A stretch of DNA of 64,000 nucleotides from positions 62,001-126,000 of IMG/VR virus record IMGVR_UViG_3300028416_000004; one strand, written 5' to 3'. Position 1 is the stretch's first letter; each line of letters begins with the position of its first letter. Both the position numbers and the translations under genes were made by a program. A model generated the notes under the pieces. That model was given only the letters and a program-made list of their open reading frames with translations. It was not told the DNA's origin and did not search any database. Positions 3,631-40,660 of the stretch are shown here, piece after piece.

Positions 3631-6189
3631 TTATGAACCACAAGCTATACAATCATCTGGATTATCTATACTACATTGTAATTGAGACATTGCATTTAGT
3701 TCATCTTGAGACATTTCTACAACAGGAGTTACATTAACCTCCTCTTGAATAGTCTCTTTTATAGAAACTTTTTCTACTTGAACTACTTTTGGAGTATCAA
3801 AATTTTCAGAAACTTCTTCTACTTTATTTACTTCTGCACCCAAAGATTTTTTAGCTTCTGCTTTAGCATTACTTCTTAAGTAATACATACCAGTTTTTAA
3901 CCCCTTTTTCCAGCCATAAAATAAAGCCTTATTTAACTTAGCAACATTTGCATCTCTCATAAATAAATTTAAAGATTGAGATTGACAAATAAAGGCACCT
4001 CTATCTGCTGACATATCAATCAAATTAGATAACTTCATTTCCCAAGCAGTTTTATAAATTTCTCTAATTTCTCTAGGTATATCTTGAATATCTTGAATAG
4101 AACCATTATTTTTAATCATCTCAATTCTAATCTTATCATTCCATAAGCCTAAATTTATCAAGTCCATAACCAAATGCTTATTTACAACTACAAATTCTCC
4201 TGATAATACATTTCTTCTATAAATATTAGAAGTGAAAGGTTCAAAACATTCGTTATTACCTAATATTTGTGCTGTTGAAGCTGTCGGCATTGGAGCTAAT
4301 AGTAATGAGTTTTTAACCCCATATTTCATTACGCTCTTTCTTAATTTAGACCAATCCCACATTCCAGACAAATCTTCATCATTTAAATTCCATAAATTAA
4401 ATTGAAACTTACCTTCAGAAAGAGGAGAACCAACAAATGTAGAATAAGCACCATCTGTACTTTTTAAATTTTCTGTTTGTGGTAATTCTTTTAAATCTTT
4501 TTTGGCAATTTCATTAGAAGCAGTCATAGAAGCAAAATAAATTGTCTCAAAAACATCTTTATTTAACTTTTTAGCTTCTTCTGACTCAAACGGATAACCT
4601 AATACAGCAAACAAATCAGCTAAACCTTGAACTCCAATACCTATAGGCCTATGTCTCATATTAGAATTTTTAGTTTCTGGAGTGGGGTAGTAATTTTTAT
4701 CAATAACTTGATTTAAATTAACAGTTGTTTGATAAGCTACCTCATAAAGTTTGTCAAAATTAAAAGTTCTTAAAGTTTTATCTTTAGATTTCGTTTTACC
4801 ACTAGGAATATCTACAAATTTAGGTAAAGCTATAGAAGCCAAATTACAAACTGCTGTTTCATCTTTGTCAGTATATTCTAGGATTTCAGTACACAAATTA
4901 CTAGATTTAATTGTACCTAAATTCTTTTGGTTAGATTTGCTATTCGCAGCATCTTTATATAAAACATAAGGAACTCCAGTTTCAATTTGATTTTCCAAGA
5001 TTTGAGCCCATAATTCTCTAGCTTTAATAGTTTTTTCACCAATTCCTTCAATTTCATATCTTTCATATAATTCAGTAAAATCTTTTTTATCATCAGAATC
5101 ATATGCATCAATTAAACCTGGAACTTTTGCTGGGTCAAACAAAGTCCACTGACCATCCTCTTCTACTCTTTTCATAAATAAATCTGGAGTCCAAAGTGCT
5201 AAAAACAAATCTCTAGCTCTCATCTCTTCTTTACCATGATTCTTCTTTAAATCAATAAAATCTTGAATATCAGCATGCCAAGGTTCTAAATAGACAGCAA
5301 TTGAACCTTTTCGCTTCCCACCCCCTTGGTCTACGTATCTTGCAGTTTCATTAAAAACCTTTAACATTGGAACAATACCATTAGAGAAACCATTAGTTCC
5401 CTTAATATAAGAACCTTTACTTCTAATTTTGTGAATATTCACACCAATGCCACCAGCTGTTTGAGAAATTAGAGCACAATCTGATAAAGTTTTATAAATA
5501 CCTTCAATTGAATCAGAATCTATGTCTAACAAAAAACAACTAGACATTTGTGGTTTTTTTGTTCCAGCATTAAATAAAGTTGGGGTAGCATGAGTAAAAT
5601 AACCCTCTGATAATAAGTCATAAGTTTTTTGAACTTCTTTAAAATTATCACCCCAAATACCTATAGCAACTCTCATATACATATGTTGAGGAGTTTCAGT
5701 TATTTGATTATTCATTCTTAACAAATAAGCTCTCTCTAAAGTTTTAAATCCAAAATATTCAAAATCATAATCTCTATCATGAATAATCATAGATTCGATT
5801 TTTTTATGATTTTTCTGAACAACTTCATAAACTTCATCGGAAATCATACCTGCATTAAGACCAGTTTTTGGGTCTATATAACTATATAAATCTTCTATTG
5901 TTTCTTTGAAGCTTTTTTTGGTTTCTTTTTTTAAAGCACTAATAGCAATTCTTGAAGCTAAAATAGAATAGTCTGGGTGTATTCTTGTCATAGCCGCTGC
6001 TGTTTCTGATGCTAATTTATCCAACTCTTTAGATGTAACTCCATCATAAACTCCAGAAATAACTTTTTGTGCAACTTCTAAGTAATCTACATATTCAGTA
6101 TCTAAATCATAAGTTTGCTTTTTGACTCTAGAAGAAATTTTATCAAATTTAATTGTTTCTTCTGTACCATCTCTTTTAATTATTCTCAT
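3631..6189 (-). CDS. nrdA: Ribonucleoside-diphosphate reductase class Ia, alpha subunit
   Basis: N-terminal ATP cone (IIKRDG), [32 protein letters not shown] and C-terminal CIACGS. Confidence 0.98.
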
Positions 6190-6213
6190 ATTTTTTATTT
6201 ATTTATATTTTAT

Positions 6214-7236
6214 TTAAAAATCATCATCACTTCCATCAAAACTAATACTATTATCTTTTGAGTCACTTCCTACTCCAGACTTAGAATAATCAGCCACTCT
6301 CTTTTCAAAGAAGTTTGTTTTATTCTCTAAAGCTATATTTGCCATAAAATCAAAAGGATTTTTTGCATTAAACATTGGAGAACACTTTAAATCAATCAAT
6401 AAATTATCAGCTACATACTCTAAATATTGCTTCATTAAATCTGCATTCATTCCAATTAAACTAACTGGTAAAGATTCTGTAATAAACTCTTTTTCAATCT
6501 CTAAAGCAGAACTGATAATCTCTTTTATTCTAGATTCTGGAACTTTGTTTACAAGATGATTATTGTGTAAGTGTACAGCAAAATCACAATGCAAACCTTC
6601 ATCTCTAGAAATTAATTCATTAGAAAAACTAAGACCTGGCATTAACCCTCTACTTTTTAACCAAAAAATTGAACAAAAAGAACCAGAAAAGAAAATTCCT
6701 TCAACAGCCGCAAATGCTATTAACCTTTCAGCAAAACTGCTAGATTCAATCCATCTCAAAGCCCATTCACCCTTCTTTTTTACTGCATCTATATTCTCTA
6801 ATGCATTAAACAACATATTTTTTTCATCTTTATCTTTTACATAAGTGTCAATTAATAAAGAATAAGTTTCAGAGTGAATATTTTCCATTGCAATCTGAAA
6901 ACCATAAAAGAATTTAGCCTCTGCATATTGAACTTCACTAACAAAGTTTTCTGCTAAATTTTCATTTACAATTCCATCAGAAGCTGCGAAAAAAGCTAAA
7001 ATATTTTTAATAAAATATCTTTCATTATCATTTAACGTCTCCCAATCAGATAAATCTTGCTGCAAATCAATCTCTTCAGCAGTCCAAAAACTAGCTTCAG
7101 CTTTTTTGTAAAATTCCCATATATCATTATATTGTATTGGAAAAATAACAAATCTATTAGGATTTTCTTTTAAGATGTTTTCTTCTAAATGATTTAGTTT
7201 TTCTACATTTTTTTCGTTTAAAATCTCTTGACTCAT
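6214..7236 (-). CDS. nrdB: Ribonucleoside-diphosphate reductase class Ia, beta subunit
   Basis: [31 protein letters not shown] and RDEGLH di-iron motifs. Confidence 0.98.
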
Positions 7237-7444: not shown

Positions 7445-8485
7445 TTACTTTTTAACTTTCTCTAAAACTTTAGAAGAATATTCTTTTTCTTTAGAGATTA
7501 AACGATTAAAAGGTCTAAAAAATAAAGACATGTCATTATTGAAAACATGCATATTAAAGCCATCTTTAATCATTAACTTCATAGCATTATTTATACCTCT
7601 ATCTTGCTCTACTGAAGGCATAATAATTATACAATCTATTATTTCACTTACTTCATCTATAGCTTTTTGGTTAACTATAGGCTTTTTGAGATTCATCAAC
7701 TCTCTATTTAACTCTATAGTTTTTCTTCCATTAATAATTTGCTCATAAATTTTTAATGGCTTCTCTTTTTGTTTTTCTTCAGCTTCTTTTATTAATTCAT
7801 CTAAAGTATATCTCTCTTCAAAAAATCTAGGGAAGTACGTTTTCATCTTTTTCATACCAACCCCCTTTAGGCCTGTAATTGAATCTGAAGTATCTCCTTC
7901 TATACATTTTGCAAACAAAGCGTTTTTATGTGTATATCCAAATATCTCTTTAAAATTATCAACATTAATCAACTTTCCATCTGAAGGTCTTATAACAGAA
8001 ACATTCTCATCTATTAATTGATGAAAATCTTTATCACTACTATATATTATAACATTTTCATCTTTATGTCTATTTTTTACATATAAACCTAACAAATCAT
8101 CAGCTTCAACATATTCTACCTCAACTTGCCTTACACACAATTCTTCTAAATAATTTTTTACTTGTATTTTTTGCTTTAATTTACTATACTTTCTCTGCCT
8201 TTCCTCATCTATCTCTTCATCTGTAAAGTAATAAGACTCTTCTTCCCAAGATTTATCTCTATCTCCTTTATATAAAGGATAAATGTTTTTTCTAAAAATG
8301 CCAGACATAATTCCATCCCAAAAAACAACAACTCTGTCTGGCATAGTTTTATCTACTATAGACCTTAAACTATCTAAAAAACCATATGAACCACCACAAT
8401 GCTCCCCTTTAGAAAATAAATCTTGTCGTTTCATAAAGTTACGCTTCAGATTCCATTCACCATCTATCAATAAGACTTTTCTCAT
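7445..8485 (-). CDS. 5'-3' exonuclease / flap endonuclease (T4 RNase H or PolI N-domain type)
   Basis: LLIDG, VVVFWDG, YKGDR, EADD, SSDKDFHQL and GDTSDSITGLKGVG motifs. Confidence 0.93.
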   Translation of the reverse strand: MRKVLLIDGEWNLKRNFMKRQDLFSKGEHCGGSYGFLDSLRSIVDKTMPDRVVVFWDGIMSGIFRKNIYPLYKGDRDKSWEEESYYFTDEEIDEERQRKYSKLKQKIQVKNYLEELCVRQVEVEYVEADDLLGLYVKNRHKDENVIIYSSDKDFHQLIDENVSVIRPSDGKLINVDNFKEIFGYTHKNALFAKCIEGDTSDSITGLKGVGMKKMKTYFPRFFEERYTLDELIKEAEEKQKEKPLKIYEQIINGRKTIELNRELMNLKKPIVNQKAIDEVSEIIDCIIIMPSVEQDRGINNAMKLMIKDGFNMHVFNNDMSLFFRPFNRLISKEKEYSSKVLEKVKK

Positions 8486-9456
8486 TATTTACCACTGTAT
8501 TTATTCCAGTCATCATCAAATCTCAACTCCCAATCAGTTCTGTGTTCTTTCTTATAATTGTTTAAGTCAGTAGTTGTATCTTTAACAAATCCATGAGCTG
8601 TACATAATATTTTATCTTTAACAGAAATGTTTGTTATGTGATTCTTTTCAACAACAATAGCTGTTTTAATTGCAAAAGAAACATTTACACCATCCTTAGT
8701 AGCATATACTTTTGTTGAATTTGATAAAATACCACCCATTCTTATAATTAAACTAGCAGCTTTAGCAATACCCTTACCACCATATGGAGTTAAAGTGTTT
8801 GCAATAGTACCCTCATAAGCGTGATTTACAATTAACAAAGTTGCACTATAAGGAAAATCTGCACGTTTTGTTGCTGAAATTTGTTTTTCAATAACTCTAT
8901 GAATTTGTTGAGTTAAAACTTTAGCAGTTTTCATAATTGCTCCATCTGCATCTTTTTCAATAGCATCTCTTTCAGCTTTACTTACTACGTTACCAATAGA
9001 ATCTATTATAACTAAGATATCAGTTGGTAAAACTCCATCTCTTTGGTCTTTTAGTCTATCTCTAACAAATTTAGTAATATCTTCAACTTCCTCTATTGAA
9101 TCAACATAAAGCATATCACCTTGAGTAATACCCATATCTAATGCGTGACTCCAATTGAACTTTTTTTCAGTATTAATAAAAATAGGAAGAATATCATTAT
9201 CTATAGCACCTTTAGCTGCTTCTAAAGCTAGAGTTGATTTACCTGAATCTGGATGTCCATAAGCCATAGTTACACCATACATAGGTATACCAGGAAGTTG
9301 AGTAGTGTCTTGATAAGCTCTACTTAATGGAATCCATTCATCTTCTTTATAAATAACTTCTTCTAAATCTAAATTCTTTCTATAATCACTTATAGAAAAA
9401 GTTTTTTTAGGCTTTAAATTTGGAGTACCTTCTCCTTCTTCTGTTTTTTTTGCCAT
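8485..9456 (-). CDS. recA: RecA/UvsX-like recombinase
   Basis: Walker A GHPDSGKST, FINTEK, IIDSIG, PYGGKG and VEKNH motifs. Confidence 0.88.
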   Translation of the reverse strand: MAKKTEEGEGTPNLKPKKTFSISDYRKNLDLEEVIYKEDEWIPLSRAYQDTTQLPGIPMYGVTMAYGHPDSGKSTLALEAAKGAIDNDILPIFINTEKKFNWSHALDMGITQGDMLYVDSIEEVEDITKFVRDRLKDQRDGVLPTDILVIIDSIGNVVSKAERDAIEKDADGAIMKTAKVLTQQIHRVIEKQISATKRADFPYSATLLIVNHAYEGTIANTLTPYGGKGIAKAASLIIRMGGILSNSTKVYATKDGVNVSFAIKTAIVVEKNHITNISVKDKILCTAHGFVKDTTTDLNNYKKEHRTDWELRFDDDWNKYSGK

Positions 9457-9480
9457 TTTTTTTAATTTAATTATTAATTA

Positions 9481-10245
9481 TTAACCATTTTGATTTTCAG
9501 AACCATCTACTAAATTAATAGACTTATCTAATATCTTCTTTATAGCATCATAAGGAAGTTCTATAAAAATTTCATTTAAAGGCTTTACTAAACTCCTTAA
9601 AGTGTTAGCCTTTTCTTCGTCAGGTAAACCATGAGCATCTACCATTAAAGGTGTCTTAACAGGTACAATCATCAAATTAACAACATCAGAATCTGATGGA
9701 AAAGTTATATTAATATCATTACCTTGAGCAATATTGGAAATGTCACCATAATACTTGTTTTTATAAAAACCAGCTATAGTATTCAATATTGTTTTAGGAA
9801 AACCCCACCACTTTGGACCTTCATGCTCTTTTCCTCTAATAGTAATGGGTAAAAAATGTCTAGTTTTAGCAACTTTTTTCTTTTTATCATCACTATCTGG
9901 TTGAGTATTTAAATGTTCACATATAGGACAAGGTCTACCGTATTGAGAAGGGCATACTACCATTTTTGAACTTCCTATATTCCAGTGAAAATCAATTTTT
10001 TGATAAGCTTTTCCAACTAAAGGTGGTACAATCCTAATTTCTTCACCCTCACTTGGTATTTTACCTTTTTTTGGATTATAAGTAGCATCCCTTAAATCTA
10101 CCTTAACCTTTTCATTTCTGTTCATAGAAGAATTTGTTTCTTCTACATCACTTAAAAATTCTTCAACATTCATTCCTTGACTGTAAGGTTGTTGATTTAC
10201 ACCCTCAAACTCTTGGTTTGAAGGATTGTTGTTGTAATCATTCAT
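9481..10245 (-). CDS. Single-stranded DNA-binding protein, T4 gp32-like
   Basis: IRIVP, H...CP...CPICEH zinc motif, WGF..TI and YGDI...GND; adjacent to the recombinase. Confidence 0.82.
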   Translation of the reverse strand: MNDYNNNPSNQEFEGVNQQPYSQGMNVEEFLSDVEETNSSMNRNEKVKVDLRDATYNPKKGKIPSEGEEIRIVPPLVGKAYQKIDFHWNIGSSKMVVCPSQYGRPCPICEHLNTQPDSDDKKKKVAKTRHFLPITIRGKEHEGPKWWGFPKTILNTIAGFYKNKYYGDISNIAQGNDINITFPSDSDVVNLMIVPVKTPLMVDAHGLPDEEKANTLRSLVKPLNEIFIELPYDAIKKILDKSINLVDGSENQNG

Positions 10246-10418
10246 ACTTTTCTCTTTTTTAAAGTTTTTAATCAGTCTAAATCGTTTTTCTTAACTTTTA
10301 TAACCGCAAATATAACTCTTAATTGAGTCTAATTATAAATATAGTTATTTTTAAATTTCATATACAAATAAAGTTAAAAAAAACATAAAAAACAATATTT
10401 TTTCAATTTATTTTTCAA

Positions 10419-12053
10419 CTAAATACATTCCATATAATTATCACCTAAAGAATAATCAATTTCAAACACCATATCATTATATTTTGATAATATTTTTTGA
10501 ATTTCTCCTATTAAATTTAACTCTTCTGGATGTATATCTAAAACAAAAGAATCAAACACTTGAAACATAAATGATGACTTGTGACTTTCTAGCCATTTTT
10601 TTAATTCATTTAATTTATCTACCACTATTTCTGCAGCTGTAGATTGAACGTAATTATTAAATGCAGCATATGTCTTATTAGGTTTTATTAAAGTACCAAA
10701 AGGGTTTATTATATACCCCAATTCTTTATAAACATTATTAATATAATCAGAAGTATTTAAGATTGGATTTAAAAATTCTTTTATATTATTTAAAGCTTCC
10801 TCTACATTGATGCCTTCTATTTTAGAAATTAAACTTTTTATTAACGTATCACCTCCTCCATACAATATAGCATGATTAATGTCCTTTGCAACTTTTCTAT
10901 GAAAAGATGTTACTTCAACACTTCCTCCCAACATAGCTTTAGCTGTATTGTAATGCAAATCAGAGTTCATATTTTTAATTATAAATTCTTCATCTCTAGA
11001 TAAGTACATAGATAACCTTGTTTCAAAAGACTTATAATCAAATACTACAATTTTACCACCTTTATGTCTGGGGATAATTTCTTTTCTTATAGGACTATCT
11101 TTAGGTATCATTTGTGGATTAAACGAATCTACACAATTTATCCTACCAGTTATAGTTCTTTTATCTGAATATCTTAACATTATATATTTCTTATCATTTT
11201 CCCAAGTGCTCCTTACTCCTTCTGGAATTTTAAAATTTGAATTAAAATATATTTTATTTGTAGATAACCAAGAAGTTACTTTATCTTTAACTGTTTGCCT
11301 TATACAAGAATTTAACTCATCTTTAGTTAGAGTGTGTTTACTTATTATGTCATTCATCATCATAGGTATAAACCTATAAACATCTTTATTTAAAAAGATT
11401 TTTATAAAATCTTTAGGTTCTATATGATTAGAATATTTAGACCAAAAAACATTTTCCAAAGTCATAACATTTCTAACTTCATCGACATAAACATATTTAA
11501 TAATATTTTGATAACTAAATAAAGTACATTCTATTTTATTGATTAATCCTGTAAAAATCTTCTTATAATCTTTGCCTACATATTCTAAACTAGAAACACT
11601 TATAGCATAAGTATTTGAATCATTGTAAATATAGCATACATTTTTATGAAAATATATAAAAGACCTAGTTTTATTATTTATATTATTTAGAAAAAAATCT
11701 CTTATCTCTCCATCTAAAATAGCATCATAAGTTATAATGTTTTTATTGAAAAACTTTTTCATAGAAAATTCAAGAAACATTTTGATGTCTGTTTTGTTTT
11801 TTCCATCCTTTTCTGTTAAACTAAAAGTCCAAAATAAATTATCTGATATTTTAGGATTATCAATAGATTGTTCTGGGAAAATTTCTCTAACTTTATTCCA
11901 ACCTATTATTAAAGTAGGTAAATCTTGCTCTTCTGTAAAACTAATAGTTTCTATTAACTCTAAAGCAAAATTATCATAATGGACATTTATATACTCCAAA
12001 TCATCAGAAGAATAAGGGAGTATTTTACAAATTTTTATCAAACTATTAAGCAT
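10419..12053 (-). CDS. polA: Divergent family A DNA polymerase (polymerase domain)
   Basis: TGRI, NPQMIPK, motif A FDYKSFETR, DLH, motif B RKVAKDINHAILYG, NNYVQSTAAEI and motif C QVFDS. Confidence 0.85.
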   Translation of the reverse strand: MLNSLIKICKILPYSSDDLEYINVHYDNFALELIETISFTEEQDLPTLIIGWNKVREIFPEQSIDNPKISDNLFWTFSLTEKDGKNKTDIKMFLEFSMKKFFNKNIITYDAILDGEIRDFFLNNINNKTRSFIYFHKNVCYIYNDSNTYAISVSSLEYVGKDYKKIFTGLINKIECTLFSYQNIIKYVYVDEVRNVMTLENVFWSKYSNHIEPKDFIKIFLNKDVYRFIPMMMNDIISKHTLTKDELNSCIRQTVKDKVTSWLSTNKIYFNSNFKIPEGVRSTWENDKKYIMLRYSDKRTITGRINCVDSFNPQMIPKDSPIRKEIIPRHKGGKIVVFDYKSFETRLSMYLSRDEEFIIKNMNSDLHYNTAKAMLGGSVEVTSFHRKVAKDINHAILYGGGDTLIKSLISKIEGINVEEALNNIKEFLNPILNTSDYINNVYKELGYIINPFGTLIKPNKTYAAFNNYVQSTAAEIVVDKLNELKKWLESHKSSFMFQVFDSFVLDIHPEELNLIGEIQKILSKYNDMVFEIDYSLGDNYMECI

Positions 12054-12110
12054 ATTGCAAATATAAATAAATTATTTACAATAAACATATAAATTTATTT
12101 TTTTTAAAAA

Positions 12111-15100
12111 TTATGAAAAAGTTATACCTTTATCTTGAAAATTTTCTTTTAAATACTCTAAGAAACTTGGAGCTCTTTGTTGCGCCCTATTCATTCCTCC
12201 TAATTTATCATTAGGGTCTAATTTTGCAGTAATGTGACTGACTTCATAACCTGGGCCTGCATTTAAATGATAATAGAAAAATACTGCTTCTTTTAAAGAA
12301 GGGAAAGTTATACCATCATCTGTGCACCCATAAGCCTTTTCTCTACTTGTTCTTTTAGAAGAAGGTCCAAAGTTTTTAGTTGTTCTTCTACTATTAAAAA
12401 ACCCAACTAAAGCAGATGTAGCAACATCTTCTTCTCCTAATTTTTCAGGATTTTTAACTAAATCTACACCAGTATATTTTTTAGCAGCTTCATAACCAGA
12501 TTTGAAAGTTATTTGATTATAACCTCTTCCTCTATATTTCCAACCATCACCTTGAGCAGTATTTCCATAACCATCTTTTCTAATACCTATAGGCTTTTGT
12601 GTATAAACAATATTTGCAATCTTTTCTTGATATTTATCTGAATCTGCTTTTTGAGTTTTTGGATTTACAAACCCTTTTTTAACAGGGTCATTCTTTTTAA
12701 AATAACTCCAGACTTCTGGTAATCTTGCTGCACTATAATTAAATCCTTCAGATTTTAACTCAAAAGAACTTTCTTTACTACAAATAGCTAACACAGAAGC
12801 TATAGCATAATCAGACTTAATACCCTTTTTAATACATTCATTTATAATTTTATTTATCCTAGTCTTCTTAGTTGAACTATTTAAATAAGCACTAACTTCC
12901 TTACTGCCAGCATCTAAACCAAAAACTTTTTGATTACTAGCATCTGAAGAACCAGCATTATTTTGAGAACTTGAAATGTCTTGTGTAAAACTTGCATACT
13001 CTTCATAAATAGCTTTCTTTTCTTCTTCTGTATATTGAGATGAACCCTCTAAAGGAGCTATCTTATCACTTATGGAAGTATAAGCCTTTTCATAATCTTG
13101 AAGAGTTATTGGAGTTATACCACCATAACTATCGCCTGCATATCTCATTTTTATACCATTTAAATCTGTAGTCATATTGTTAGGACTAATCTTATGACTA
13201 ACTTTAATAATTTGATATAATCCAGTAAAAATTGTATGATTTTCTAAAAAGAAAAATTGCATTGGAGAAATTTGTGCATTACCAATAATTTCAACACCAG
13301 CTTTGTAACTTCTTCCTTCAAAGACAGATAATAAACTACAATCAGTAGTTACTGTTCTATTTTTATTTTCATTATCAACGATAGCTTGTAAATTCACTAT
13401 ACTTTCAGCTGTTACTTTATTATCATCAGTTCCAACTTGAACATTTTTAACAATTTTATTAGTTGGGTCTCCAAATGCTACAGGAAATGCTTGAACTTGA
13501 AAATTCCTCAAATCCTTAACTGATGACTGTTTTTTATCTGGGTTATTACCAACTAAAGTCCTACTTTCTGGTGTAGGTTGAAACATTACTTGAAAAAAGT
13601 TACCTATTTTTGGCCCCATCATTTCTTGAGGTGTAAAAATATCTGTAATCTTATCATATCTAGCATTTCCGCAAATAGGGAAAAACATAAAATTATTTTT
13701 AGTACAAAGTTGTTGAAAAATATTTAAAACAGTTGTATTTGCTTTTGCTGAATATAAAGGTTTTATATTAATAATAGAATCTTCAACTTTAACTTTTCTC
13801 TCTCCAGAAGAACCAATAGCCTGAAGTGGATAATCATATCTAAAACCACCTCCAGCAACACTTCCATCATTTCTTTTTCTATTTATTGGCGTACCTTTTC
13901 CTCCATCTAAATTCTGAGAATATGTTTCTTGAAGAATTTCAGCAACATTTGGAGTTAAAACTGAAGGGTCTCCAACTTGATTAATTCTAGAACCACTAGA
14001 ATTTGTTCCTAAAATTTGCCACTGATGAAAAAGAGTATGCATTTGTTGATAAATCAAATCTTCATGCTCTCCTGCTTTACCCAAAACTGAACCAAAAACT
14101 TTATTTATTTCATCTTGATTTTTTTGAATTTTTGACCTTAAACCTTTACAGAATTGTCTTAAAAATACTAAAGTAGCCTGAGCATAGAGAATTTCATCAT
14201 CATTTACACTAGATATTGTAGCACCACTTTTCGCTGCTCCTACAGGTACTTCTTGCATAAAAGGAAACAAACCTCCAGCTAAAGGTATTATATTACACCT
14301 AACTTCTGTTCTTGAAGGATATTGAGCATAAGGAGCAATTACTACAGGATTTAAATTAATATCTAAAAAACCATCTTTTGCAGCTCCATCACTATCTTCA
14401 AGTTTATCTTCATCAGTTGGTCCAAAAGTTTTTTTCCAAACAAATTCAGAAGATTTAAAAGATTTGTCTATAGGATTTTTCATATCCTTATTTATTATTT
14501 TATTATAATCTAAAAAACTATTAATCAAATCATCACCTCTTTCTCCTTTTATAGTTTTATTATAAAATGAAATAAATTCACTTACTTTACTATTTTCTTT
14601 AGTTAAAGGTTCTTTTTTATCTTTCTTTACTAAGACTGAAGATAATTTAACTATTTGAGCTATTTCATCTTCTACTTCATCAGATTCTGTTTGAGTATCT
14701 TCTTTTTCTTCTCCTTCTTCATCCACTTCTGGTCTAGGTTGAACACCAGGTGCATTTAAAGATTCTGAAACTCTTGAAACATCTTCAGTAGAACTAAAAA
14801 CCACATACTCCATACCATTACCATCATAAAGGAAACCATTTTTATTTAAACAAACATGGGTATAAATAACACCATTCATTCCTACAAAAGTACCTAAAGT
14901 AGTCTCAAAATCTAAACCATTACCATAAGTTCTTGGTTGGTAATAAGTTTGTGCTTTTGTTTTACCAAAAAATGCTTTATTTGGACCAATTAATTTTCCC
15001 ATAAATTCCTCAACTGTATAACCAATAAAGTTAGCATTTTTCATTTCTAAACCAACACCATCATTTAAATTTAAAACATTTTTATCAACATCATATATTA

Positions 15101-17078: not shown

Positions 17079-17089
17079 ATTTTTATAAA

Positions 17090-17401
17090 TTAATATTTAG
17101 TGTTTTTTCTTAAAATTTTACCTTCTACTTCCGTCAAAACCTCCCTTAAAGGTAGTGGTATCCTTAATACAGTTTCTTTTGGAATATCAAATTCAATAGA
17201 ATATTCTGGATTAGCCAACAATATTAACCAACCATAAGTATCATCTTCATAAACTTCTGCTGAAATTCTATCTAATCTTGTTTTGTCTGAATTATATATC
17301 CTAAAAATATCCGTATTTCTCTCTTTTATTTTTATAGGAGGCATAACATCAATACCTTTTCCGTCTTCTCTTCTTAAAATTTTATACCTATCTTTTCCCA
17401 T
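17090..17401 (-). CDS. Baseplate wedge protein, gp53/LysM-like
   Basis: RLDRISAEVYEDDTYGWLILLANP...LRIP motif; lies next to the hub gene. Confidence 0.8.
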   Translation of the reverse strand: MGKDRYKILRREDGKGIDVMPPIKIKERNTDIFRIYNSDKTRLDRISAEVYEDDTYGWLILLANPEYSIEFDIPKETVLRIPLPLREVLTEVEGKILRKNTKY

Positions 17402-17483
17402 AACATTTAGTATATTGTATTAATAAATATTAATTGTTATTTTTTTATAAATTAAAACAATATAAAAAAAATGTAAAGCAAAA

Positions 17484-21422: not shown

Positions 21423-21463
21423 TATTGTTTATATTTATTTATAAATATTTTAAAATAAAAATA

Positions 21464-24613: not shown

Positions 24614-24680
24614 TTTATCAATTTATATCAATAATAAATATATTTTAATAAAAATATCTTAACAACTTTTAAAGTAAATA

Positions 24681-30094: not shown

Positions 30095-30562
30095 ATGAAT
30101 GAAGAAGAAAAAAAGAAAAAAGTTAACTCAATTTTAAAACAAACTAAAAGAAAACTTTTAAAACCCAGAAACCAAATAAAGAAAATTAAATATTTACATG
30201 CTCAATCTTATAGGATGAGCAAAAATACAACTTGGCCTGAAAGAGAGTTTGAATCTATCCTCAAAGAAATGAATATAGAATATGAATCTCAAAAAATACT
30301 TAAAGGTAAGATATATGATTATTATATACCATCTGCTAATATGTTATGTGAAGTTGATGGTGATTATTATCATGGAAATGAAGAAAAATATGAAACTTTA
30401 AACGAAATGCAAAAAAAAGCGAAACAAAACGATAGATATAAAGATATCATTGCAAAAGGCATGGGTTACGGAATGTTTCGCATTTGGGAATCTGAACTTA
30501 AAAATAGTAGAGATTTAGCAAAAGAAAGAATAATAAACGAAATCTTAATTAAGAAACTCTAA
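30095..30562 (+). CDS. Vsr/DUF559-like (PD-(D/E)xK) endonuclease, probable free-standing homing endonuclease
   Basis: T.PE..F..IL, YDYYIP, EVDGDYYHG, ND..KD..A...GY...RIWESE; on the strand opposite its neighbours. Confidence 0.85.
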   Translation: MNEEEKKKKVNSILKQTKRKLLKPRNQIKKIKYLHAQSYRMSKNTTWPEREFESILKEMNIEYESQKILKGKIYDYYIPSANMLCEVDGDYYHGNEEKYETLNEMQKKAKQNDRYKDIIAKGMGYGMFRIWESELKNSRDLAKERIINEILIKKL

Positions 30563-35583: not shown

Positions 35584-36063
35584 ATGAAAGAAAATAAATT
35601 AATTTTAGGTTTTGAAAACACAAAAGAACTATTTAGTTCTATTCTTGGATTAAAAAATTCTTTCATAAATTTCCTATTAGCTATGATTACAGCCTCAACT
35701 TCATTTATTACTCAATACATTTGGGATGATGCATCAGCTGTATATTTTATGTTATTCTTAATTATTGTAGATGCTTCCACTGGAATATGGAAATCTATAA
35801 AATATAGAACTTTTAGTAGTAGTAAGTTACCTAGAGTTTTAGTTATCTCAATAATATATGTTTTAATGCTTGCTATTAGTTGGAACGCTGCAAAACACTC
35901 AACTTTATTCATTTGGTTACCTGGAATGGTTTATGGAGGTCTTATTGGAACTCCATTAGTGTCAATATACGAAAACTTTGCAGAATTGGGATATGTACCA
36001 AAAGGTTTATTGTATGATATTAAAGAAAAAATAAAACATTACTTCAACAAAAAGCAAAATTAA
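35584..36063 (+). CDS. Holin (phage holin 4-1-like)
   Basis: Several transmembrane segments, LIIVDASTGIWKS, S.KL and SIYENFAELG motifs; ATG at 35584 preferred; TATTTAT at 35543-35549. Confidence 0.78.
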   Translation: MKENKLILGFENTKELFSSILGLKNSFINFLLAMITASTSFITQYIWDDASAVYFMLFLIIVDASTGIWKSIKYRTFSSSKLPRVLVISIIYVLMLAISWNAAKHSTLFIWLPGMVYGGLIGTPLVSIYENFAELGYVPKGLLYDIKEKIKHYFNKKQN

Positions 36064-38333
36064 GATATTTTTCTAAATTGACAACCATCTTGAAACTTTA
36101 ACCAACCTTGTTCTTTTTTGAATTTAGTTATATATATACTTCCCTCTTCAATTAAATCACTTATTCTATCATAAGCATCAGCCCAAACGACCATCTTAAC
36201 CACAGAACCTCCATCACTCAACTCTAAAGACCAATATTTTTTACCTTTTATAGAATACTTTTCTTGAACACCCTTTATTACAAAATAATAGTATTTATTT
36301 GGATTCTCAAATTCCGTTACAGGTTCTATATTAAAATCATATTTATCCATAAAATCTTGCTTTAACTTAGATATCTTATTAAACAAATTCAAATCTAAAC
36401 TACAAACTTTTATAAAATCTTTATATTTAACCTCTTCAGGTGTTGGTTCATATTTATCTTTTAAGTTTTCTTCAATAATATCAAATCTATTTTGTCCAAA
36501 CAAATCCATTTGCATAGTATTACTTTTCATTTTATACTTACGAAATTCCATTAACTCTTCTCTTGAACTAGACCAATCATCAAAAACACCAGCATTTAAA
36601 CAAGCTTCAAAGTTAGCTTTATTAAATTTACTAAATTGATGCATAAAAAACTTATCTTTATCAATGTCAGATACCCCAATAGACTGAAGCTCTTCAAATG
36701 CTATCTCACCCATTCCATTAATGCTAGAAAAGCCCATAAGTATAGTGTTTTCGTCTAACATTCCCCATTCCCATTTAGATTTTCTGTTGGGGGGTAAAAT
36801 CTTTATACCTTTTGTAAAAGATGTCATAATAGCTGAAGATAACCAAGATTCATCATCTTTAGCGTGATTCAATAAAGCAGTATAAAACTCTGTAGGGTAA
36901 TATCTTTTCATATACAAAGTTTGCATCGCAACATAAGAATAACTTACTGAGTGACTTCTGTTGAACGAATATCCCAAATACTTAACTAACCACTCCTCTA
37001 TATCTTTAACTTCATTCTCTTCTAAACCTTTCGCTTTACAACCCTCTTTAAATTTATCCCAAAGTTTTAAATATTCTTTATAATTCTTATTTGAAGATTC
37101 ACTTTCTTCCAACTCTTCTCCAGATAATGTCTTTTTTATAACCTTAGAAGCTTTATCCATAACTTTTCTTAAATTATCACCTTCCCCTAAAGACATTCCA
37201 GCCAATTCATGAGCAATAAACATTAATTGCTCTTGAAAAATTAATACTCCATTTGTATTTCTTAATAAAGGCTCTAAAGATGGATGAACTAAATCAATAG
37301 ACTCTGGGCTTTTTTTATTCCTTATATACTCCTCATGAGCACCTACACCCATAGGGCCTGGTCTATATAATGCATTGGCAGCAACCATTTCTTCAAAGTT
37401 TTCTGTATGCATATTTTTTATAAGCTTAGACATTCCTTCGGATTCAAACTGAAATACTCCTTGATTATTACCACTTCTTAACTCTTCAAAAAGTTCAGGA
37501 TTATCTAAATCAACATATTTAACTTCTTCAGAAATATCTATACCTCTATTTTCTTTTACTAATTTAATGGATTGTTTTAAAACGTTTAAAGTAGTCAAAT
37601 TAAGTCTGTCTAACTTTAGTATTCCCAAGTCAGACAAATCTTTACCACTACCAGATTCTTGAAAACCAGATACAGTAACACCTTTTACTATATTTACTGG
37701 CATATATTCCCAAACTGGCCCTGGTGTAATAACTATACCAGCAGCATGTTTACCTAAATTTCTAACTTGACCTTGTAGAGTTAAAGTGGTATCTATAATT
37801 TTTTTATTTGATGGATTTTGTATCCAACTTTTGACTACTTCAGATGATTCTGGTGAATTTGGATGTTCTCTTAACCAATCTTTTAAGTCTCCTTCATATT
37901 TCATAAAAGATTTTGGCATTTCTTTAGTTACAGCAAAAACATTCGAATCAAAACCTGCATCTTGACCAAAAGCTTTAGCCACATCTTTAAGGCACCCTTT
38001 TTCGTTAAAAGTAGAAAATGTAATTACAGGAAAAACACACTCTTTTCCATATTTATTATAAAGAAACTCATCAGTTTTAACATCTGAACCAGTTTCGAAG
38101 TCTATATCAATATCAGGAGGAGAATTTCTAGCTGGATTTAAAAATCTCTCAAAATATAAATCAAACCTTAAAGGGTCAATTTTCGTAATATCAAGACACC
38201 ATGAAAGAAGACTTCCTGCTGCAGAATTGTGTACACCTATTCCCTCAATATTATAAGAATGTGTTTCTTCAACAGTTAAATCATGAACTTTACCTTTGTA
38301 ATTTTTAAATTTTCTACTTTTTAGTTTTGCCAT
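36060..38333 (-). CDS. dnaE: DNA polymerase III alpha, C-terminal part, with N-terminal split-intein IntC
   Basis: SAAGSLLSWCLDIT, FERFLNP.R..PPDIDIDF, GKHAAG, GVFQFES, ALYRPGPM, YSFNRSHS and a C-terminal OB fold. Confidence 0.95.
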   Translation of the reverse strand: MAKLKSRKFKNYKGKVHDLTVEETHSYNIEGIGVHNSAAGSLLSWCLDITKIDPLRFDLYFERFLNPARNSPPDIDIDFETGSDVKTDEFLYNKYGKECVFPVITFSTFNEKGCLKDVAKAFGQDAGFDSNVFAVTKEMPKSFMKYEGDLKDWLREHPNSPESSEVVKSWIQNPSNKKIIDTTLTLQGQVRNLGKHAAGIVITPGPVWEYMPVNIVKGVTVSGFQESGSGKDLSDLGILKLDRLNLTTLNVLKQSIKLVKENRGIDISEEVKYVDLDNPELFEELRSGNNQGVFQFESEGMSKLIKNMHTENFEEMVAANALYRPGPMGVGAHEEYIRNKKSPESIDLVHPSLEPLLRNTNGVLIFQEQLMFIAHELAGMSLGEGDNLRKVMDKASKVIKKTLSGEELEESESSNKNYKEYLKLWDKFKEGCKAKGLEENEVKDIEEWLVKYLGYSFNRSHSVSYSYVAMQTLYMKRYYPTEFYTALLNHAKDDESWLSSAIMTSFTKGIKILPPNRKSKWEWGMLDENTILMGFSSINGMGEIAFEELQSIGVSDIDKDKFFMHQFSKFNKANFEACLNAGVFDDWSSSREELMEFRKYKMKSNTMQMDLFGQNRFDIIEENLKDKYEPTPEEVKYKDFIKVCSLDLNLFNKISKLKQDFMDKYDFNIEPVTEFENPNKYYYFVIKGVQEKYSIKGKKYWSLELSDGGSVVKMVVWADAYDRISDLIEEGSIYITKFKKEQGWLKFQDGCQFRKIS
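38226..38333 (-). mobile_element. Split intein C-fragment (IntC, 36 aa)
   Basis: MAKLKSRKFKNYKGKVHDLTVEETHSYNIEGIGVHN followed by S(+1); blocks F and G present. Confidence 0.93.
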
Positions 38334-38454
38334 TATTATTTTCTTTATGTTCTTGTTTTGCTTTTCTATTTTATTAATTAATCAAAAATTTCACAAACTA
38401 AACATATTATATAAATCATAAACGAATAATTAATTAAAAGATTTTCTCATAATT

Positions 38455-40554
38455 CTAATATTTATTTATATCAACAATATCATCTTCTTCAGTTAAATTT
38501 TTAGCTTCCACCCACCCACGATTTTCAGTAAGAATTTCATGGTCAAGAGTACATTCTATCACTCTACCATCATCAAATTTAAGTTCAATAATCTCTTCTT
38601 GAATATCATACTCCAATGTATCAATAACTTTTCTTTCATCTCCGAATGCATCAATTACCTTATCTCCAATTTCAATTGTATCTATTGGAACATACATTCC
38701 ATCAGCCATTTTTACTCTACTTCCTGGCAAAAAACAACCCCTCCCAGGGCCAACTTCTATATCATTATCAGCACAAAATCTTATTAATTCCCAAACAACC
38801 AGAAAATAATCTAACATCTTCTTATCTCTGATGACATCCAATTCATAATCTAATCTCTTTCTATATTCTTCAATTTTCTTTTCATCTATTTTTATTGGAC
38901 CTTTCTTTTGATATAAACTAAGTTTTTGGTTTAATTTGGCATGCGAAAGTCTTCTAATTATCTCTTCAGTATCTTTTGTTTTAAAAAATTCAAAAACATC
39001 GTTAGTAGGTTTATATTGAGGATATTTTTCTACATTAGTTTCAAAATCAAAATTACATAAAGAAGATATTTTTTCACTATTAATCATACATATTCTAACA
39101 AAATCTTCTTCATAATCATATGCAAAGGATTCATTCATTTCGAATATATCAGATTCTGAAGGATAATACATATCTCCATTTTCTTTTGTTCTAGCTTTTT
39201 TGATAGGTCTTTTTTGATTAATTGATATCAATACATCTTGAAGAACTTTTTCATTCTTTTTAGGAAAGTAAACATCGTTTGAAACAATAATAGCCATATT
39301 ATACTTGTTAGACATATTTATAATAAATTTATTATATTGTCTTTGTATCTCATTGTCTTCTAGAGATATTTCGGCTATATAATTTCTTCTTCCGAAAAGG
39401 TTAAGCATTTTAACTAAATATTCTTCAGCTTGTCTGTATTTACCCATTTGTAAATATTTAGATATAGTACCATGTTTTGAACTGGTAGTTAATATCAAAC
39501 CTTCTTTTCCTTCTAAAATCCACTTAGTTTTTATTCTTGGAACTCTATAAAAACCTTCAGCAAATGAAAGATAATTGATTTTATTTATATTAACATATCC
39601 TTCATCATTTAAAACTATTATTTTTTGCAAAACATTAATATCTTGCTCTTTTGGTTCATATTGACCACCTATACTATCATTTAAAAAGAATTCACAACCA
39701 ATTATAGGTTTAATATCTTTTGATTTACATTTTTGATAAAACGAAAAAGCACTAGATAAACTACCTTTATCAGTTAAAACTAAAGTTTTATGATTATACT
39801 CTTTAGCCATACTTATATAATCACTTGTGGAGCCAGCACCTTCTAAAACAGAATGATAAGTATGTAAGCCGAAATTAACCATTGAATGGTCTATTGGAAC
39901 AGAGCCATTTTTTTGCTTCCATTTATTTATAATTTCTAATTCTGAACTTTTTGAGTCTAAAAATTCTAAAACATCTTCTCCAAACCCTAATGCACCAACT
40001 CTTCTTAACTCAAAAAAACATTTAGCTAAAGCTTCAACGTCAATTAAAGCATCGTGGGCATCTTCAAATGTTTTATTAAAAAGTATTTTATGGAGTTCTG
40101 TTAAAGTTGGTGGTTTTAAACCGTTTTTGCCTTGTATTCTACAAAAGTTTACTGTTGAATTCATAGTACATATATGAGTAATGTCTCTCATATAATTTTT
40201 CATGTTCAACCTATAAAATTCACATGCAGTTACCTTGTTATCGAAACTAATATTATGAGCTACTAAAAATTTTGATTTCTCTATATCTTTAATAAACTCA
40301 TTTAAAGCTTGTTCTAAAGGTACACCTTCAAAGTTGGCTCTTTCATTAGTTATTCTATGAATCCTAATACTTTCTTCAGGTATTATAAATTTATCTGGCT
40401 TTATGATTCTGTTATTTGAACCAATCTCCACACCATTAATATCGTAAACCTTCCATGCTAACTGAACTATTCTTGGCCAATTATTAACATCGGTTATGGG
40501 AGCACTGAAATCTTCTGGCAACCCTGTTGTTTCTGTATCAAATATTATAAACAT
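38455..40554 (-). CDS. dnaE: DNA polymerase III alpha, N-terminal part (DnaQ-like exonuclease + PHP), with C-terminal split-intein IntN
   Basis: FDTETTG, VAHNISFD and AHDALID DEDDh motifs; PHP motifs HTYHS, LTDKG, KPIIGCE; YFLVVWE...GPGRG; start 40554 preferred because TATATTTG overlaps the ATG at 40563. Confidence 0.95.
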   Translation of the reverse strand: MFIIFDTETTGLPEDFSAPITDVNNWPRIVQLAWKVYDINGVEIGSNNRIIKPDKFIIPEESIRIHRITNERANFEGVPLEQALNEFIKDIEKSKFLVAHNISFDNKVTACEFYRLNMKNYMRDITHICTMNSTVNFCRIQGKNGLKPPTLTELHKILFNKTFEDAHDALIDVEALAKCFFELRRVGALGFGEDVLEFLDSKSSELEIINKWKQKNGSVPIDHSMVNFGLHTYHSVLEGAGSTSDYISMAKEYNHKTLVLTDKGSLSSAFSFYQKCKSKDIKPIIGCEFFLNDSIGGQYEPKEQDINVLQKIIVLNDEGYVNINKINYLSFAEGFYRVPRIKTKWILEGKEGLILTTSSKHGTISKYLQMGKYRQAEEYLVKMLNLFGRRNYIAEISLEDNEIQRQYNKFIINMSNKYNMAIIVSNDVYFPKKNEKVLQDVLISINQKRPIKKARTKENGDMYYPSESDIFEMNESFAYDYEEDFVRICMINSEKISSLCNFDFETNVEKYPQYKPTNDVFEFFKTKDTEEIIRRLSHAKLNQKLSLYQKKGPIKIDEKKIEEYRKRLDYELDVIRDKKMLDYFLVVWELIRFCADNDIEVGPGRGCFLPGSRVKMADGMYVPIDTIEIGDKVIDAFGDERKVIDTLEYDIQEEIIELKFDDGRVIECTLDHEILTENRGWVEAKNLTEEDDIVDINKY
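38458..38736 (-). mobile_element. Split intein N-fragment (IntN, 93 aa)
   Basis: CFLPGSRVKMADG (block A) ... ECTLDHEILT (block B) ... GWVEAKNL, then stop. Confidence 0.93.
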
Positions 40555-40660
40555 ATGATACAAATATAATTAGTTTTCACTTTAATTCAAAAGAAAGCTA
40601 ATAAAAATTTAATAATTAATTCTGGGTGGTGGTTAATTATTTTATTGAAAATATTAAATT

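What the first reader, a model, noticed from the sequence alone, without database searches (positions are those of the whole stretch)
10419..12053. Second polymerase: family A enzyme with His at the F762-equivalent position and an altered motif C
Seen: motif B RKVAKDINHAILYG aligns to E. coli PolI R754-K758-F762-Y766 with His at 762; motif C is QVFDS rather than QVHDE; motif A is DYKSFETR. Both catalytic Asp residues remain, and I see no clear proofreading motifs in the N-terminal half. Established: position 762 controls nucleotide discrimination and is usually Phe, Tyr or Leu. Inference: this is a specialised accessory polymerase beside DnaE (gap filling with the separate 5'-3' exonuclease, or altered nucleotide selectivity).
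Basis: partly seen in the sequence, partly recalled or inferred. Interest (0 to 1): 0.62.

Follow-up and report, generated by a model that had tools for sequence, protein, structure and literature searches.

The report
Accessory phage polymerase with histidine pocket
A marine jumbo phage that copies its genome with a DnaE-type enzyme also carries a small, proofreading-dead family A DNA polymerase. The sugar-contacting residue of this polymerase is a conserved histidine, which makes it a new branch of a recently described class of extra phage polymerases and a candidate for unusual nucleotide selectivity.

Summary
The ORF at window 10419-12053 (-) is a 544-aa family A polymerase. His394 aligns with E. 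coli F762, motif C reads F500-D501-S502, and both catalytic Asp residues and the steric-gate Glu are present.

- **The His is a family trait.** It is kept in 115 of 121 metagenomic homologues, which form one clade.
It is shared with sister clades and with UDG-fused phage PolAs. The characterised Tt72 polymerase is active with it.
Phe343 is invariant at the I709 position. This is the same substitution as the Klenow mutant I709F, which accepts rNTPs better.
- **The structure fits a reduced polymerase.** The model (pLDDT 93) is Klenow-like, with a catalytically dead exonuclease domain, a shortened thumb and an unassigned 100-residue N-terminal domain.
- **The enzyme is accessory.** All 11 large phage records with this gene also encode DnaE. 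The order PolA-SSB-RecA-FEN-RNR is conserved down to Flavobacterium phage immuto, so the gene is a positional counterpart of "divPolA1" (Yutin et al. 2024).

The most likely role is short-patch synthesis with the separate flap nuclease, filling lagging-strand gaps or extending recombination intermediates. Altered sugar selectivity is plausible but untested. I rate it a new variant of a known kind, of moderate interest.

The parts
10419..12053 (-). PolA gene, 544 aa (P0001), stop codon included
   Evidence: ORF list and translation. Pfam DNA_pol_A 96.1 bits over residues 247-541. PHROG 17 DNA polymerase.
11754..12053 (-). N-terminal alpha/beta domain, residues 1-100, fold not assigned
   Evidence: Outside the Klenow-aligned part of the model. 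Folded alone it gives pLDDT 86. Best PDB Z is 6.2, with only generic alpha/beta hits; UDG/MUG hits score Z 5.2-6.1. hhalign to a UDG domain gives probability 0.07. Conserved residues are C9, P46, G51, W52, W75 and E81.
11379..11753 (-). 3'-5' exonuclease-like domain, residues about 101-225, catalytically dead
   Evidence: Model residues 101-544 align to Klenow 324-928 (Z 26.7, rmsd 3.6, 428 residues). There is no conserved DxE, and the strand where the fold match places Exo I carries F135.
10422..11378 (-). Polymerase domain, residues about 226-544, with a shortened thumb
   Evidence: hhalign to E. coli 655-925. About 65 residues precede the TGR motif, against about 135 in Klenow. Pfam profile positions 1-64 are unmatched.
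11016..11039 (-). Motif A DYKSFETR: D339 (=D705), F343 (=I709, codon 11025-11027), E344 (=E710 steric gate)
   Evidence: D, F and E are each invariant in 150 of 150 family sequences.
10857..10898 (-). Motif B (O-helix) RKVAKDINHAILYG: R386, K390, H394, Y398
   Evidence: H is present in 115 of 121 sequences and 141 of 150.
10872..10874 (-). Codon CAT for His394, the F762 / B3 equivalent
10548..10562 (-). Motif C QVFDS: F500 (=H881), D501 (=D882), S502 (=E883)
   Evidence: S is present in 121 of 121 sequences; position 500 is H74/Y25/F22.
9481..10245 (-). gp32-like single-strand DNA binding protein, next gene downstream
   Evidence: Pfam gp32 at E 1.2e-4, below the cut-off; PHROG 1192 SSB at E 7e-7. 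A gene annotated or scoring as an ssDNA-binding protein holds the same place in relatives.
8485..9456 (-). RecA/UvsX-like recombinase
   Evidence: PHROG 97 UvsX-like at E 3e-19; Pfam RecA at E 4e-6.
7445..8485 (-). Separate 5'-3' flap exonuclease (FEN)
   Evidence: Pfam 5_3_exonuc_N 100.7 bits plus 5_3_exonuc.
3631..7236 (-). Ribonucleotide reductase NrdB (6214-7236) and NrdA (3631-6189), at the end of the conserved module
   Evidence: Pfam 368 and 683 bits.
38455..40563 (-). DnaE N-terminal part: RNase T-like exonuclease, PHP domain, start of Pol III alpha, and the N-half of the split intein
   Evidence: Pfam; translation.
36060..38333 (-). DnaE C-terminal part: 36-aa C-half of the split intein, then the rest of Pol III alpha, HHH and OB domains
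   Evidence: Pfam; translation.

Best explanation
This is a catalytically competent family A DNA polymerase without proofreading. It serves as the accessory polymerase of a marine jumbo phage whose main replicase is a DnaE-type enzyme fused to a proofreading exonuclease.

It belongs to a conserved module: PolA, gp32-like SSB, RecA/UvsX-like recombinase, separate flap endonuclease, ribonucleotide reductase. Within that module it most likely works as an unfused Pol I. It would fill the short gaps left when the flap nuclease removes primers on the lagging strand, or other single-strand gaps, on SSB-coated DNA.

Its nucleotide pocket is rebuilt compared with Pol I. An invariant Phe sits at the I709 position and a polar His at the F762 position. 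The Glu next to the motif C Asp is replaced by Ser.

Shown here: the identity, the fold, the residue equivalences, their conservation, the dead exonuclease, the co-occurrence with DnaE and the gene order. Inferred: polymerase activity, the gap-filling role and any effect of His394 or Phe343 on substrate choice.
For: - **Identity and residue mapping:**
- **Structure:** a high-confidence model (pLDDT 93) aligns to Klenow, Bst and Taq large fragments at Z 25-27.
- **Active-site residues:** D339, D501, R386, K390, Y398 and E344 are invariant or nearly so in 150 family sequences. That points to purifying selection on a working active site.
- **Ser at the E883 position is compatible with activity.** Tt72 polymerase carries it, and its S616A mutant keeps 76% activity (PMC9324360).
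- **No proofreading carboxylates** are conserved. For genomes of 125-519 kb this argues against a main-replicase role.
- **DnaE is always present.** Here it carries an N-terminal RNase T-like exonuclease and a PHP domain. It is found in all 10 large related records searched.
- **The gene order is conserved.** PolA-(SSB)-RecA-FEN-(DnaB)-RNR holds at 39% identity, in the Asn762 sister clade and in Flavobacterium phage immuto.
- **Published precedent:** Yutin et al. describe the same situation for divPolA1 and infer a role in replication (PMC11348598).
- **Possible expression:** seawater metatranscriptome runs hold 44% and 21% of the gene's sampled words. This evidence is weak, because DNA carry-over cannot be excluded.
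Against: - No biochemical data exist for any member.
- According to Yutin et al., divPolA1 also occurs in phages whose regular polymerase is family A or B. Those enzymes can fill gaps themselves, so the role may not be tied to a weakness of DnaE.
- No phage ligase was found in the 232-kb record, which is 88% complete. The maturation pathway would therefore need a host enzyme.
- No primase or sliding clamp was recognised either, so the lagging-strand machinery of this phage is not understood.
- The adjacency to a recombinase fits a recombination role just as well.
Confidence: 0.45

Rival explanations
1. It is a recombination or repair polymerase. It extends 3' ends in D-loops made by the neighbouring RecA/UvsX-like recombinase (recombination-dependent replication, as in T4-like phages), or it fills gaps during repair, in the manner of the exonuclease-dead Pol theta and Pol nu.
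For: The gene sits two genes upstream of the recombinase, with the SSB gene between them, and this arrangement is conserved. The portal and baseplate proteins are T4-like. The exonuclease-dead architecture resembles Pol theta and Pol nu, which appear among the structural matches at Z about 24.5. No primase was recognised in the record, which would make recombination-primed synthesis attractive.
Against: The flap nuclease and helicase genes in the same module point just as well to lagging-strand processing. Nothing here separates the two roles, and they are not mutually exclusive.
Confidence: 0.2
2. The remodelled sugar pocket (Phe at the I709 position, His at F762) gives the enzyme a distinct substrate range. 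It might accept ribonucleotides or 3'-modified nucleotides readily. In the extreme case it could start or extend primers itself, as reported for the exonuclease-truncated PolA CCPol with its partner MP.
For: Both residues that pack against the sugar of the incoming nucleotide differ from Pol I, and both are conserved (F343 in 150 of 150, H394 in 141 of 150). Klenow I709F incorporates rNTPs better than wild type (review PMC4854868). F762 governs ddNTP discrimination (PMC10520511). T7 RNA polymerase has Met at the equivalent O-helix position and H-D-S in motif C, and a few family members have Met at 394. No primase family was detected in the phage record.
Against: The steric-gate Glu (E344) is invariant, as in dNTP-selective enzymes. 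No MP-like small gene lies next to the polymerase in this window. Absence of primase hits in an 88%-complete record, tested with four Pfam models, is weak evidence. No sign of a Z-genome was found (no PurZ).
Confidence: 0.12
3. It is the real replicative polymerase, or the lagging-strand one, and DnaE is the auxiliary enzyme.
For: Yutin et al. note that the context of divPolA1 is a clean replication module, while the 'regular' polymerases of those phages sit among functionally mixed genes. In this window DnaE lies beside virion genes.
Against: It has no proofreading and a shortened thumb, and no clamp was found. The genomes are large, 125-519 kb. DnaE carries its own exonuclease and a PHP domain, and it hosts an intein, which typically sits in essential replication genes.
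Confidence: 0.1
4. It is an inactive polymerase relic kept for a structural or regulatory role.
For: The exonuclease is dead, the thumb is shortened, and E883 and (in this copy) H881 are replaced.
Against: Every residue known to be essential for PolA chemistry is invariant across homologues down to 34% identity. A Ser at the E883 position is compatible with activity.
Confidence: 0.03

Closest known systems
divPolA1 (Yutin et al. 2024, Virol J 21:200, PMC11348598): the extra divergent PolA of Flavobacterium phage immuto and related 155-190 kb phages
   Same: It is encoded in addition to a 'regular' polymerase. It has a truncated thumb and an inactivated 3'-5' exonuclease. Its position and downstream gene order are the same, PolA-SSB-RecA-FEN-DnaB-NrdB-NrdA. 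Both fall in one PolA superclade (SH-like support 0.82). The phage backbones are related: the portal is 38-42% identical to those of immuto and Microcystis phage Mel-JY01.
   Different: The immuto, Mel-JY01 and LR756508 proteins are shorter (408-452 aa) and form their own clade. Where motif B aligns (immuto, LR756508) they have Phe at 762. They have His at the steric-gate position (motif A DYDAFH or DFDGYH) and Y-D-A in motif C. They match this family's profile only weakly (22-52 bits against the genomes; 30-74 bits for the whole proteins). The family studied here has 544 aa, an extra N-terminal domain, a retained steric-gate Glu, His at 762 and D-S in motif C. I could not check whether the paper's marine representative (QDP51333) belongs to this family, because that record is not held.
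UDG-PolA fusions and Thermus phage Tt72 polymerase
   Same: They share Ser at the E883 position (HDS) and phylogenetic proximity. P0191 and P0200 are UDG-exo-pol proteins of about 800 aa with F762 and HDS. Tt72 has D615-S616 and is active. Both have a three-part layout with an extra domain N-terminal to the exonuclease domain.
   Different: Those enzymes have an active or recognisable exonuclease, a recognisable family 4 UDG domain, Phe at 762 and a full thumb. Here no UDG signature is present, and the structural similarity of the N-domain to UDG/MUG is in the noise (Z 5.2-6.1).
Bacterial DNA polymerase I (Klenow, Bst and Taq large fragments)
   Same: The fold matches (Z 25-27), as do motifs A, B and C, the TGR motif and the steric-gate Glu. 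Taq and Bst also have a dead exonuclease domain. The likely job, gap filling with a 5' nuclease, is the same.
   Different: The 5' nuclease is a separate gene. The thumb is shortened. The substitutions I709F, F762H and E883S are present, with H881F in this copy. There is an extra N-terminal domain.
Klenow I709F and Taq I614 mutants (laboratory variants)
   Same: The substitution at the motif A residue that flanks the steric gate is the same: Phe343 here.
   Different: Those are engineered single mutants with relaxed sugar selectivity. Here the Phe is natural, invariant and paired with a polar residue at 762.

Membership tests
Family A DNA polymerase (Pfam PF00476) | Profile score above the curated cut-off | tested here: met
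   96.1 bits against a cut-off of 34.3, residues 247-541.
Family A DNA polymerase (Pfam PF00476) | Catalytic Asp in motifs A and C; O-helix Arg, Lys and Tyr; TGR motif | tested here: met
   D339, D501, R386, K390, Y398 and T302-G303-R304 align to E. coli D705, D882, R754, K758, Y766 and the TGR motif.
Family A DNA polymerase (Pfam PF00476) | Klenow-like fold (exonuclease-like domain plus palm, fingers and thumb) | tested here: met
   AF2 model with pLDDT 93. VIA Z 26.7, rmsd 3.6 over 428 residues to 1d8y.
Family A DNA polymerase (Pfam PF00476) | Template-directed DNA synthesis | not testable with these tools
   Needs the purified protein.
divPolA1 (Yutin et al. 2024) | Encoded in addition to a 'regular' polymerase of family A, B or C | tested here: met
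   DnaE is in the window and in 10 of 10 related large records. No PolB was found and no second PolA.
divPolA1 (Yutin et al. 2024) | Conserved arrangement of replication genes downstream | tested here: met
   The window has PolA-SSB-RecA-FEN-NrdB-NrdA. Immuto has PolA-x-x-SSB-RecA-FEN-DnaB-NrdB-NrdA.
divPolA1 (Yutin et al. 2024) | 3'-5' exonuclease domain inactivated | tested here: met
   No conserved DxE; only E81, D110 and E200 are conserved acidic positions.
divPolA1 (Yutin et al. 2024) | Truncated thumb | tested here: inconclusive
   About 65 residues (two helices, 226-263) lie before the palm strands and TGR, against about 135 in Klenow. Pfam positions 1-64 are unmatched. Model coordinates could not be inspected.
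divPolA1 (Yutin et al. 2024) | Sequence kinship with the named members, closer than with other PolAs | tested here: inconclusive
   Immuto, Mel-JY01 and LR756508 whole proteins score 30-74 bits against the family profile, lower than canonical PolAs at about 105-120 bits. They fall in the same superclade (support 0.82) but as a separate clade. The paper's other representatives are not held.
UDG-PolA fusion | [quoted passage not shown] | tested here: not met
   No Pfam UDG hit. hhalign to the UDG part of P0191 gives probability 0.07. VIA Z is at most 6.1 to MUG/UDG, within noise.
Bacterial Pol I | Fused 5'-3' exonuclease domain, and F762 with H881-D882-E883 | tested here: not met
   The FEN is a separate gene at 7445-8485. 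The residues are H394 and F500-D501-S502.
T7-like single-subunit RNA polymerase | Small residue (Gly) in place of the steric-gate Glu, and an RNAP N-terminal domain | tested here: not met
   E344 is invariant. T7 RNAP motif A is DGSCSG. Only the H-D-S of motif C is shared.
CCPol-type priming PolA | Partner protein MP and primase activity | not tested
   There is no small ORF of 60 aa or more between the PolA and SSB genes in this window. Relatives do have one or two small ORFs there. No comparison with CCPol or MP was made.

The most novel reading that the evidence does not exclude
His394 and the invariant Phe343 form a natural, previously undescribed sugar pocket. This pocket might let a family A polymerase use ribonucleotides or 3'-modified nucleotides efficiently. 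In a phage record where no primase was recognised, the enzyme could then make or extend primers itself. That would be a PolA-based priming or mixed RNA/DNA synthesis step in jumbo-phage replication.
Probability: 0.1. Interest if true: 0.8.

Novelty: new variant of a known kind. Interest (0 to 1): 0.45.

Why it matters
- **A fourth natural state at position 762.** Phage ecology and enzyme engineering treat position 762 (B3) as a three-state marker, Phe, Tyr or Leu. It is linked to speed, fidelity and dideoxynucleotide discrimination. Here a whole clade keeps His there: about 30 clusters at 50% identity, found in seawater and in samples from other IMG and SRA projects that I did not classify. 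A sister clade keeps Asn. Both carry an invariant Phe at the I709 position. This defines a natural pocket design that has not been tested in the laboratory.
- **A tractable test case.** The enzyme is small (544 aa) and easy to assay. It could show how a polar residue at this site affects dNTP, ddNTP and rNTP choice.
- **A wider view of extra phage polymerases.** The clade broadens the recently described class of 'extra' PolAs in large phages. It ties that class firmly to DnaE-based replication and a split Pol I layout, which bears on how jumbo phages organise lagging-strand synthesis.

Tried and rejected
- **Phage database matches.** A megablast of window 8000-24000 against GenBank phages found no match. 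A tblastn of the protein found only distant PolAs, with E 4e-12 at best, so no cultured phage in that collection has an orthologue.
- **Exonuclease domain by sequence.** hhalign of the N-terminal 240 residues to the Klenow exonuclease domain was not significant (probability 0.28). The domain is recognisable only by structure.
- **The N-terminal 100 residues.** VIA against 48,161 chains gave a best Z of 6.2. hhalign to a UDG domain gave probability 0.07. The language-model look-alike search scored 0.84 to exonuclease clusters, under the tool's threshold. The Atlas fold search returned only generic alpha/beta hits. The UDG-remnant idea is therefore neither supported nor excluded.
- **Viral structure library.** The BFVD search found no close relative; identities were at most 21%.
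- **Phylogeny.** An IQ-TREE run with bootstraps hit the time limit. The trees reported are FastTree trees with SH-like supports.
- **Read mapping.** Those places were sent to no tool afterwards.
- **Records not held.** MK892584 and LR796625, the divPolA1 representatives, are not held. The paper's supplements as held contain no sequences. The cluster look-up returned no NCBI accession numbers.
- **Literature.** Searches for F762H, F667H, Y526H or His762 in a polymerase found nothing.
- **Complex prediction.** I did not run complex prediction, because the report does not claim a physical PolA-FEN complex.
- **Inactive-relic reading.** Rejected because all essential residues are invariant.
Full report
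**What is there.** The window is bases 62001-126000 of a 232.5-kb IMG/VR virus record. The DNA is low in G+C, about 28%. All but a few short ORFs of 100 aa or more lie on the minus strand. It carries a T4-like portal, a terminase and baseplate proteins. By portal similarity, the nearest cultured relatives are Microcystis phage Mel-JY01 and Flavobacterium phage immuto, at 38-42% identity. The ORF at 10419-12053 (-) encodes 544 residues. It scores 96 bits on Pfam DNA_pol_A against a cut-off of 34.3.

**Check of the observation.**
- Three alignments map the key residues the same way: phmmer against Taq, profile-profile alignment of a 96-sequence family alignment against E. coli Pol I, and hmmalign.
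- The mapping is D339=D705, E344=E710, R386=R754, K390=K758, H394=F762, Y398=Y766, F500=H881, D501=D882 and S502=E883.

**The substitutions are family traits.** A word-index search returned 120 full-length homologues at 34-93% identity, from Tara, JGI, ENA and Logan assemblies.
- His394 is kept in 115 of 121 sequences; the rest have Met, Asn or Tyr.
- Ser502 is kept in 121 of 121.
- Position 500 varies: H 74, Y 25, F 22.

The exhaustive profile search found 17,053 PolA-like proteins. There is a sharp gap between the family (about 30 clusters at 50% identity, E below 1e-149) and the next proteins (E 1e-43 and weaker).

**Where the family sits among PolAs.** On a FastTree of the polymerase domain the family is monophyletic (SH-like support 0.993).
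- Its neighbours are a group of about 500-aa proteins with Tyr762 and H-D-S, and a group with Asn762 and F-D-S or F-D-A.
- Further out lie proteins of about 800 aa with Phe762 and H-D-S. Two of these (P0191, P0200) were scanned and are UDG-exonuclease-polymerase fusions.
- So the Ser at the E883 position is an older, widely shared trait, while the His at 762 marks this family. One unrelated protein (P0194) has it independently.
- The Ser is compatible with catalysis. The Thermus phage Tt72 polymerase has D615-S616 and is active, and its S616A mutant keeps 76% activity (PMC9324360).

Phe343 occupies the I709 position. It is invariant in 150 of 150 family sequences and in both sister groups, whereas canonical PolAs have Ile, Val, Leu or Met there. 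Klenow I709F is reported to incorporate ribonucleotides better than wild type (review PMC4854868). F762 governs dideoxynucleotide discrimination (PMC10520511). Both residues that flank the sugar of the incoming nucleotide are thus changed. The steric-gate Glu344, however, is invariant. My inference is that Phe343 supplies the hydrophobic platform, which leaves position 762 free to be polar (Tyr, His or Asn in the three sister groups).

**Structure.** AlphaFold2 with the family alignment gave pLDDT 93 and pTM 0.88.
- Residues 101-544 align to Klenow 324-928 (Z 26.7, rmsd 3.6, 428 residues). Bst, Taq, Pol theta and Pol nu align equally well.
- The exonuclease-like part (about 101-225) has no conserved D-x-E. 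Across residues 1-230 only E81, D110 and E200 are conserved acidic positions. Proofreading is therefore lost.
- Only about 65 residues separate this domain from the TGR motif, against about 135 in Klenow, and Pfam profile positions 1-64 are unmatched. The thumb is therefore shortened.
- Residues 1-100 form a separate alpha/beta domain (pLDDT 86 when folded alone). No confident structural match was found, so its function is unresolved.

**Context.** Directly downstream lie four further elements:
- a gp32-like SSB
- a RecA/UvsX-like recombinase
- a separate 5'-3' flap nuclease
- NrdB and NrdA

The same order is found next to homologues at 39% identity, next to an Asn762 sister protein, and in the annotated genome of Flavobacterium phage immuto.

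DnaE is in the window as two ORFs joined by a split intein. It carries an N-terminal RNase T-like exonuclease and a PHP domain. All ten large IMG/VR records (125-519 kb) that encode this PolA also encode DnaE. The phage record has no family B polymerase and no second PolA.

Searches of the 88%-complete record also found none of the following:
- ligase
- DnaG-type or Prim-Pol primase
- Toprim domain
- beta clamp
- PurZ
- ThyX

They found only a weak DnaB-like match, and a ThyA homologue.

**Comparison with what is known.** Surveys of viral PolA speak only of Phe, Tyr and Leu at position 762 (PMC6302109; PMC10201439). Searches for His at this site in a polymerase found nothing.

Yutin et al. 2024 (PMC11348598) described "divPolA1". 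[quoted passage not shown] It has a truncated thumb, an inactivated exonuclease and conserved replication genes downstream.

The gene studied here is a positional counterpart of divPolA1 and lies in the same superclade (support 0.82). It is nevertheless a distinct family. The immuto, Mel-JY01 and LR756508 proteins differ from it in these ways:
- they are 408-452 aa long
- they have Phe at 762 where motif B aligns
- they have His at the steric-gate position
- they have Y-D-A in motif C
- they match the family profile only weakly

I could not obtain the paper's marine representative to see whether it belongs to this family.

**Interpretation.** The enzyme is most likely an active, non-proofreading accessory polymerase doing short-patch synthesis within the SSB-recombinase-flap nuclease module. 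In effect it is an unfused Pol I beside a DnaE replicase. Confidence in the gap-filling version is 0.45, and in a recombination-linked version 0.2. A distinct sugar selectivity or priming role is possible (0.12), a main-replicase role unlikely (0.1), and an inactive relic very unlikely (0.03). None of these is shown biochemically.

**Limits.**
Those places were sent to no tool afterwards.
- The only hint of expression is that seawater metatranscriptome assemblies hold 44% and 21% of the gene's sampled words.
- The trees are FastTree trees, because an IQ-TREE run timed out.

**Verdict.** This is a new variant (a His762/Phe709 subfamily) of a known kind (family A polymerase, divPolA1-like accessory enzyme). 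Interest is 0.45.

Noticed in passing
window 36060-40563 (-): DnaE is encoded by two adjacent genes joined by a naturally split intein. The first ends ...GPGRG|CFLPGSRV..., followed by about 93 intein residues and a stop. After a 121-nt gap, the second starts with a 36-aa intein C-half ending in HN, followed by SAAGS. The split lies in the conserved GPGRG-SAAGS motif of Pol III alpha. Relatives have DnaE either intact (1141-1183 aa) or in two frames.
   Followed up: partly
window 30545-33880 (-): A RecD2-like helicase (OB, HHH, AAA_19/30, SH3_13 and UvrD_C_2 domains) is interrupted by a full intein with a LAGLIDADG homing endonuclease (Pfam Hom_end_hint, Hom_end, LAGLIDADG_3).
   Followed up: no
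L056 523-1749, L057 940-2298, L058 1-1326 (Mel-JY01, LR756508, immuto): The divPolA1-type mini PolAs of the cultured relatives have His at the steric-gate (E710) position (motif A DYDAFH or DFDGYH) and Y-D-A in motif C. This active site is even more derived than the one studied here.
   Followed up: partly
L061 10001-11647 (P0155) and relatives P0164, P0172, P0176, P0221, P0223: A sister clade of PolAs has Asn at the F762 position and F-D-A or F-D-S in motif C. P0155, the member whose contig was read, shows the same PolA-gp32-RecA-FEN-DnaB-RNR order. This is a second unreported residue state at that site.
   Followed up: partly
G000 whole record (232,514 bases): Pfam-based searches found no ligase, DnaG-type or Prim-Pol primase, Toprim domain, beta clamp, PolB, PurZ or ThyX. 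They found only a weak DnaB_C match at G000 24462-24641 and a ThyA homologue at G000 15791-16579. How this phage primes and seals lagging strands is unclear.
   Followed up: partly
window 12111-17078 (-): A 1655-aa protein lies directly upstream of the PolA gene. It has a weak chitinase class I / lysozyme-like match near its C-terminus. Relatives have a 1739-aa protein with an Amidase_2 domain in the same place, probably a virion-associated cell-wall hydrolase.
   Followed up: no
window 57006-59174 (-): A 722-aa protein with six DUF285 (BspA-like leucine-rich) repeats, lying next to large ORFs without any family match.
   Followed up: no
window 1790-3505 (-): A 571-aa protein with no Pfam or PHROG match, directly after NrdA. 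A 549-aa protein with a weak UVR match holds the same place in relatives (L002). It is conserved in the replication module but its function is unknown.
   Followed up: no
They lie mostly in the gap between the PolA gene and the upstream 1655-aa gene, reaching into the last codons of that gene.
   Followed up: no
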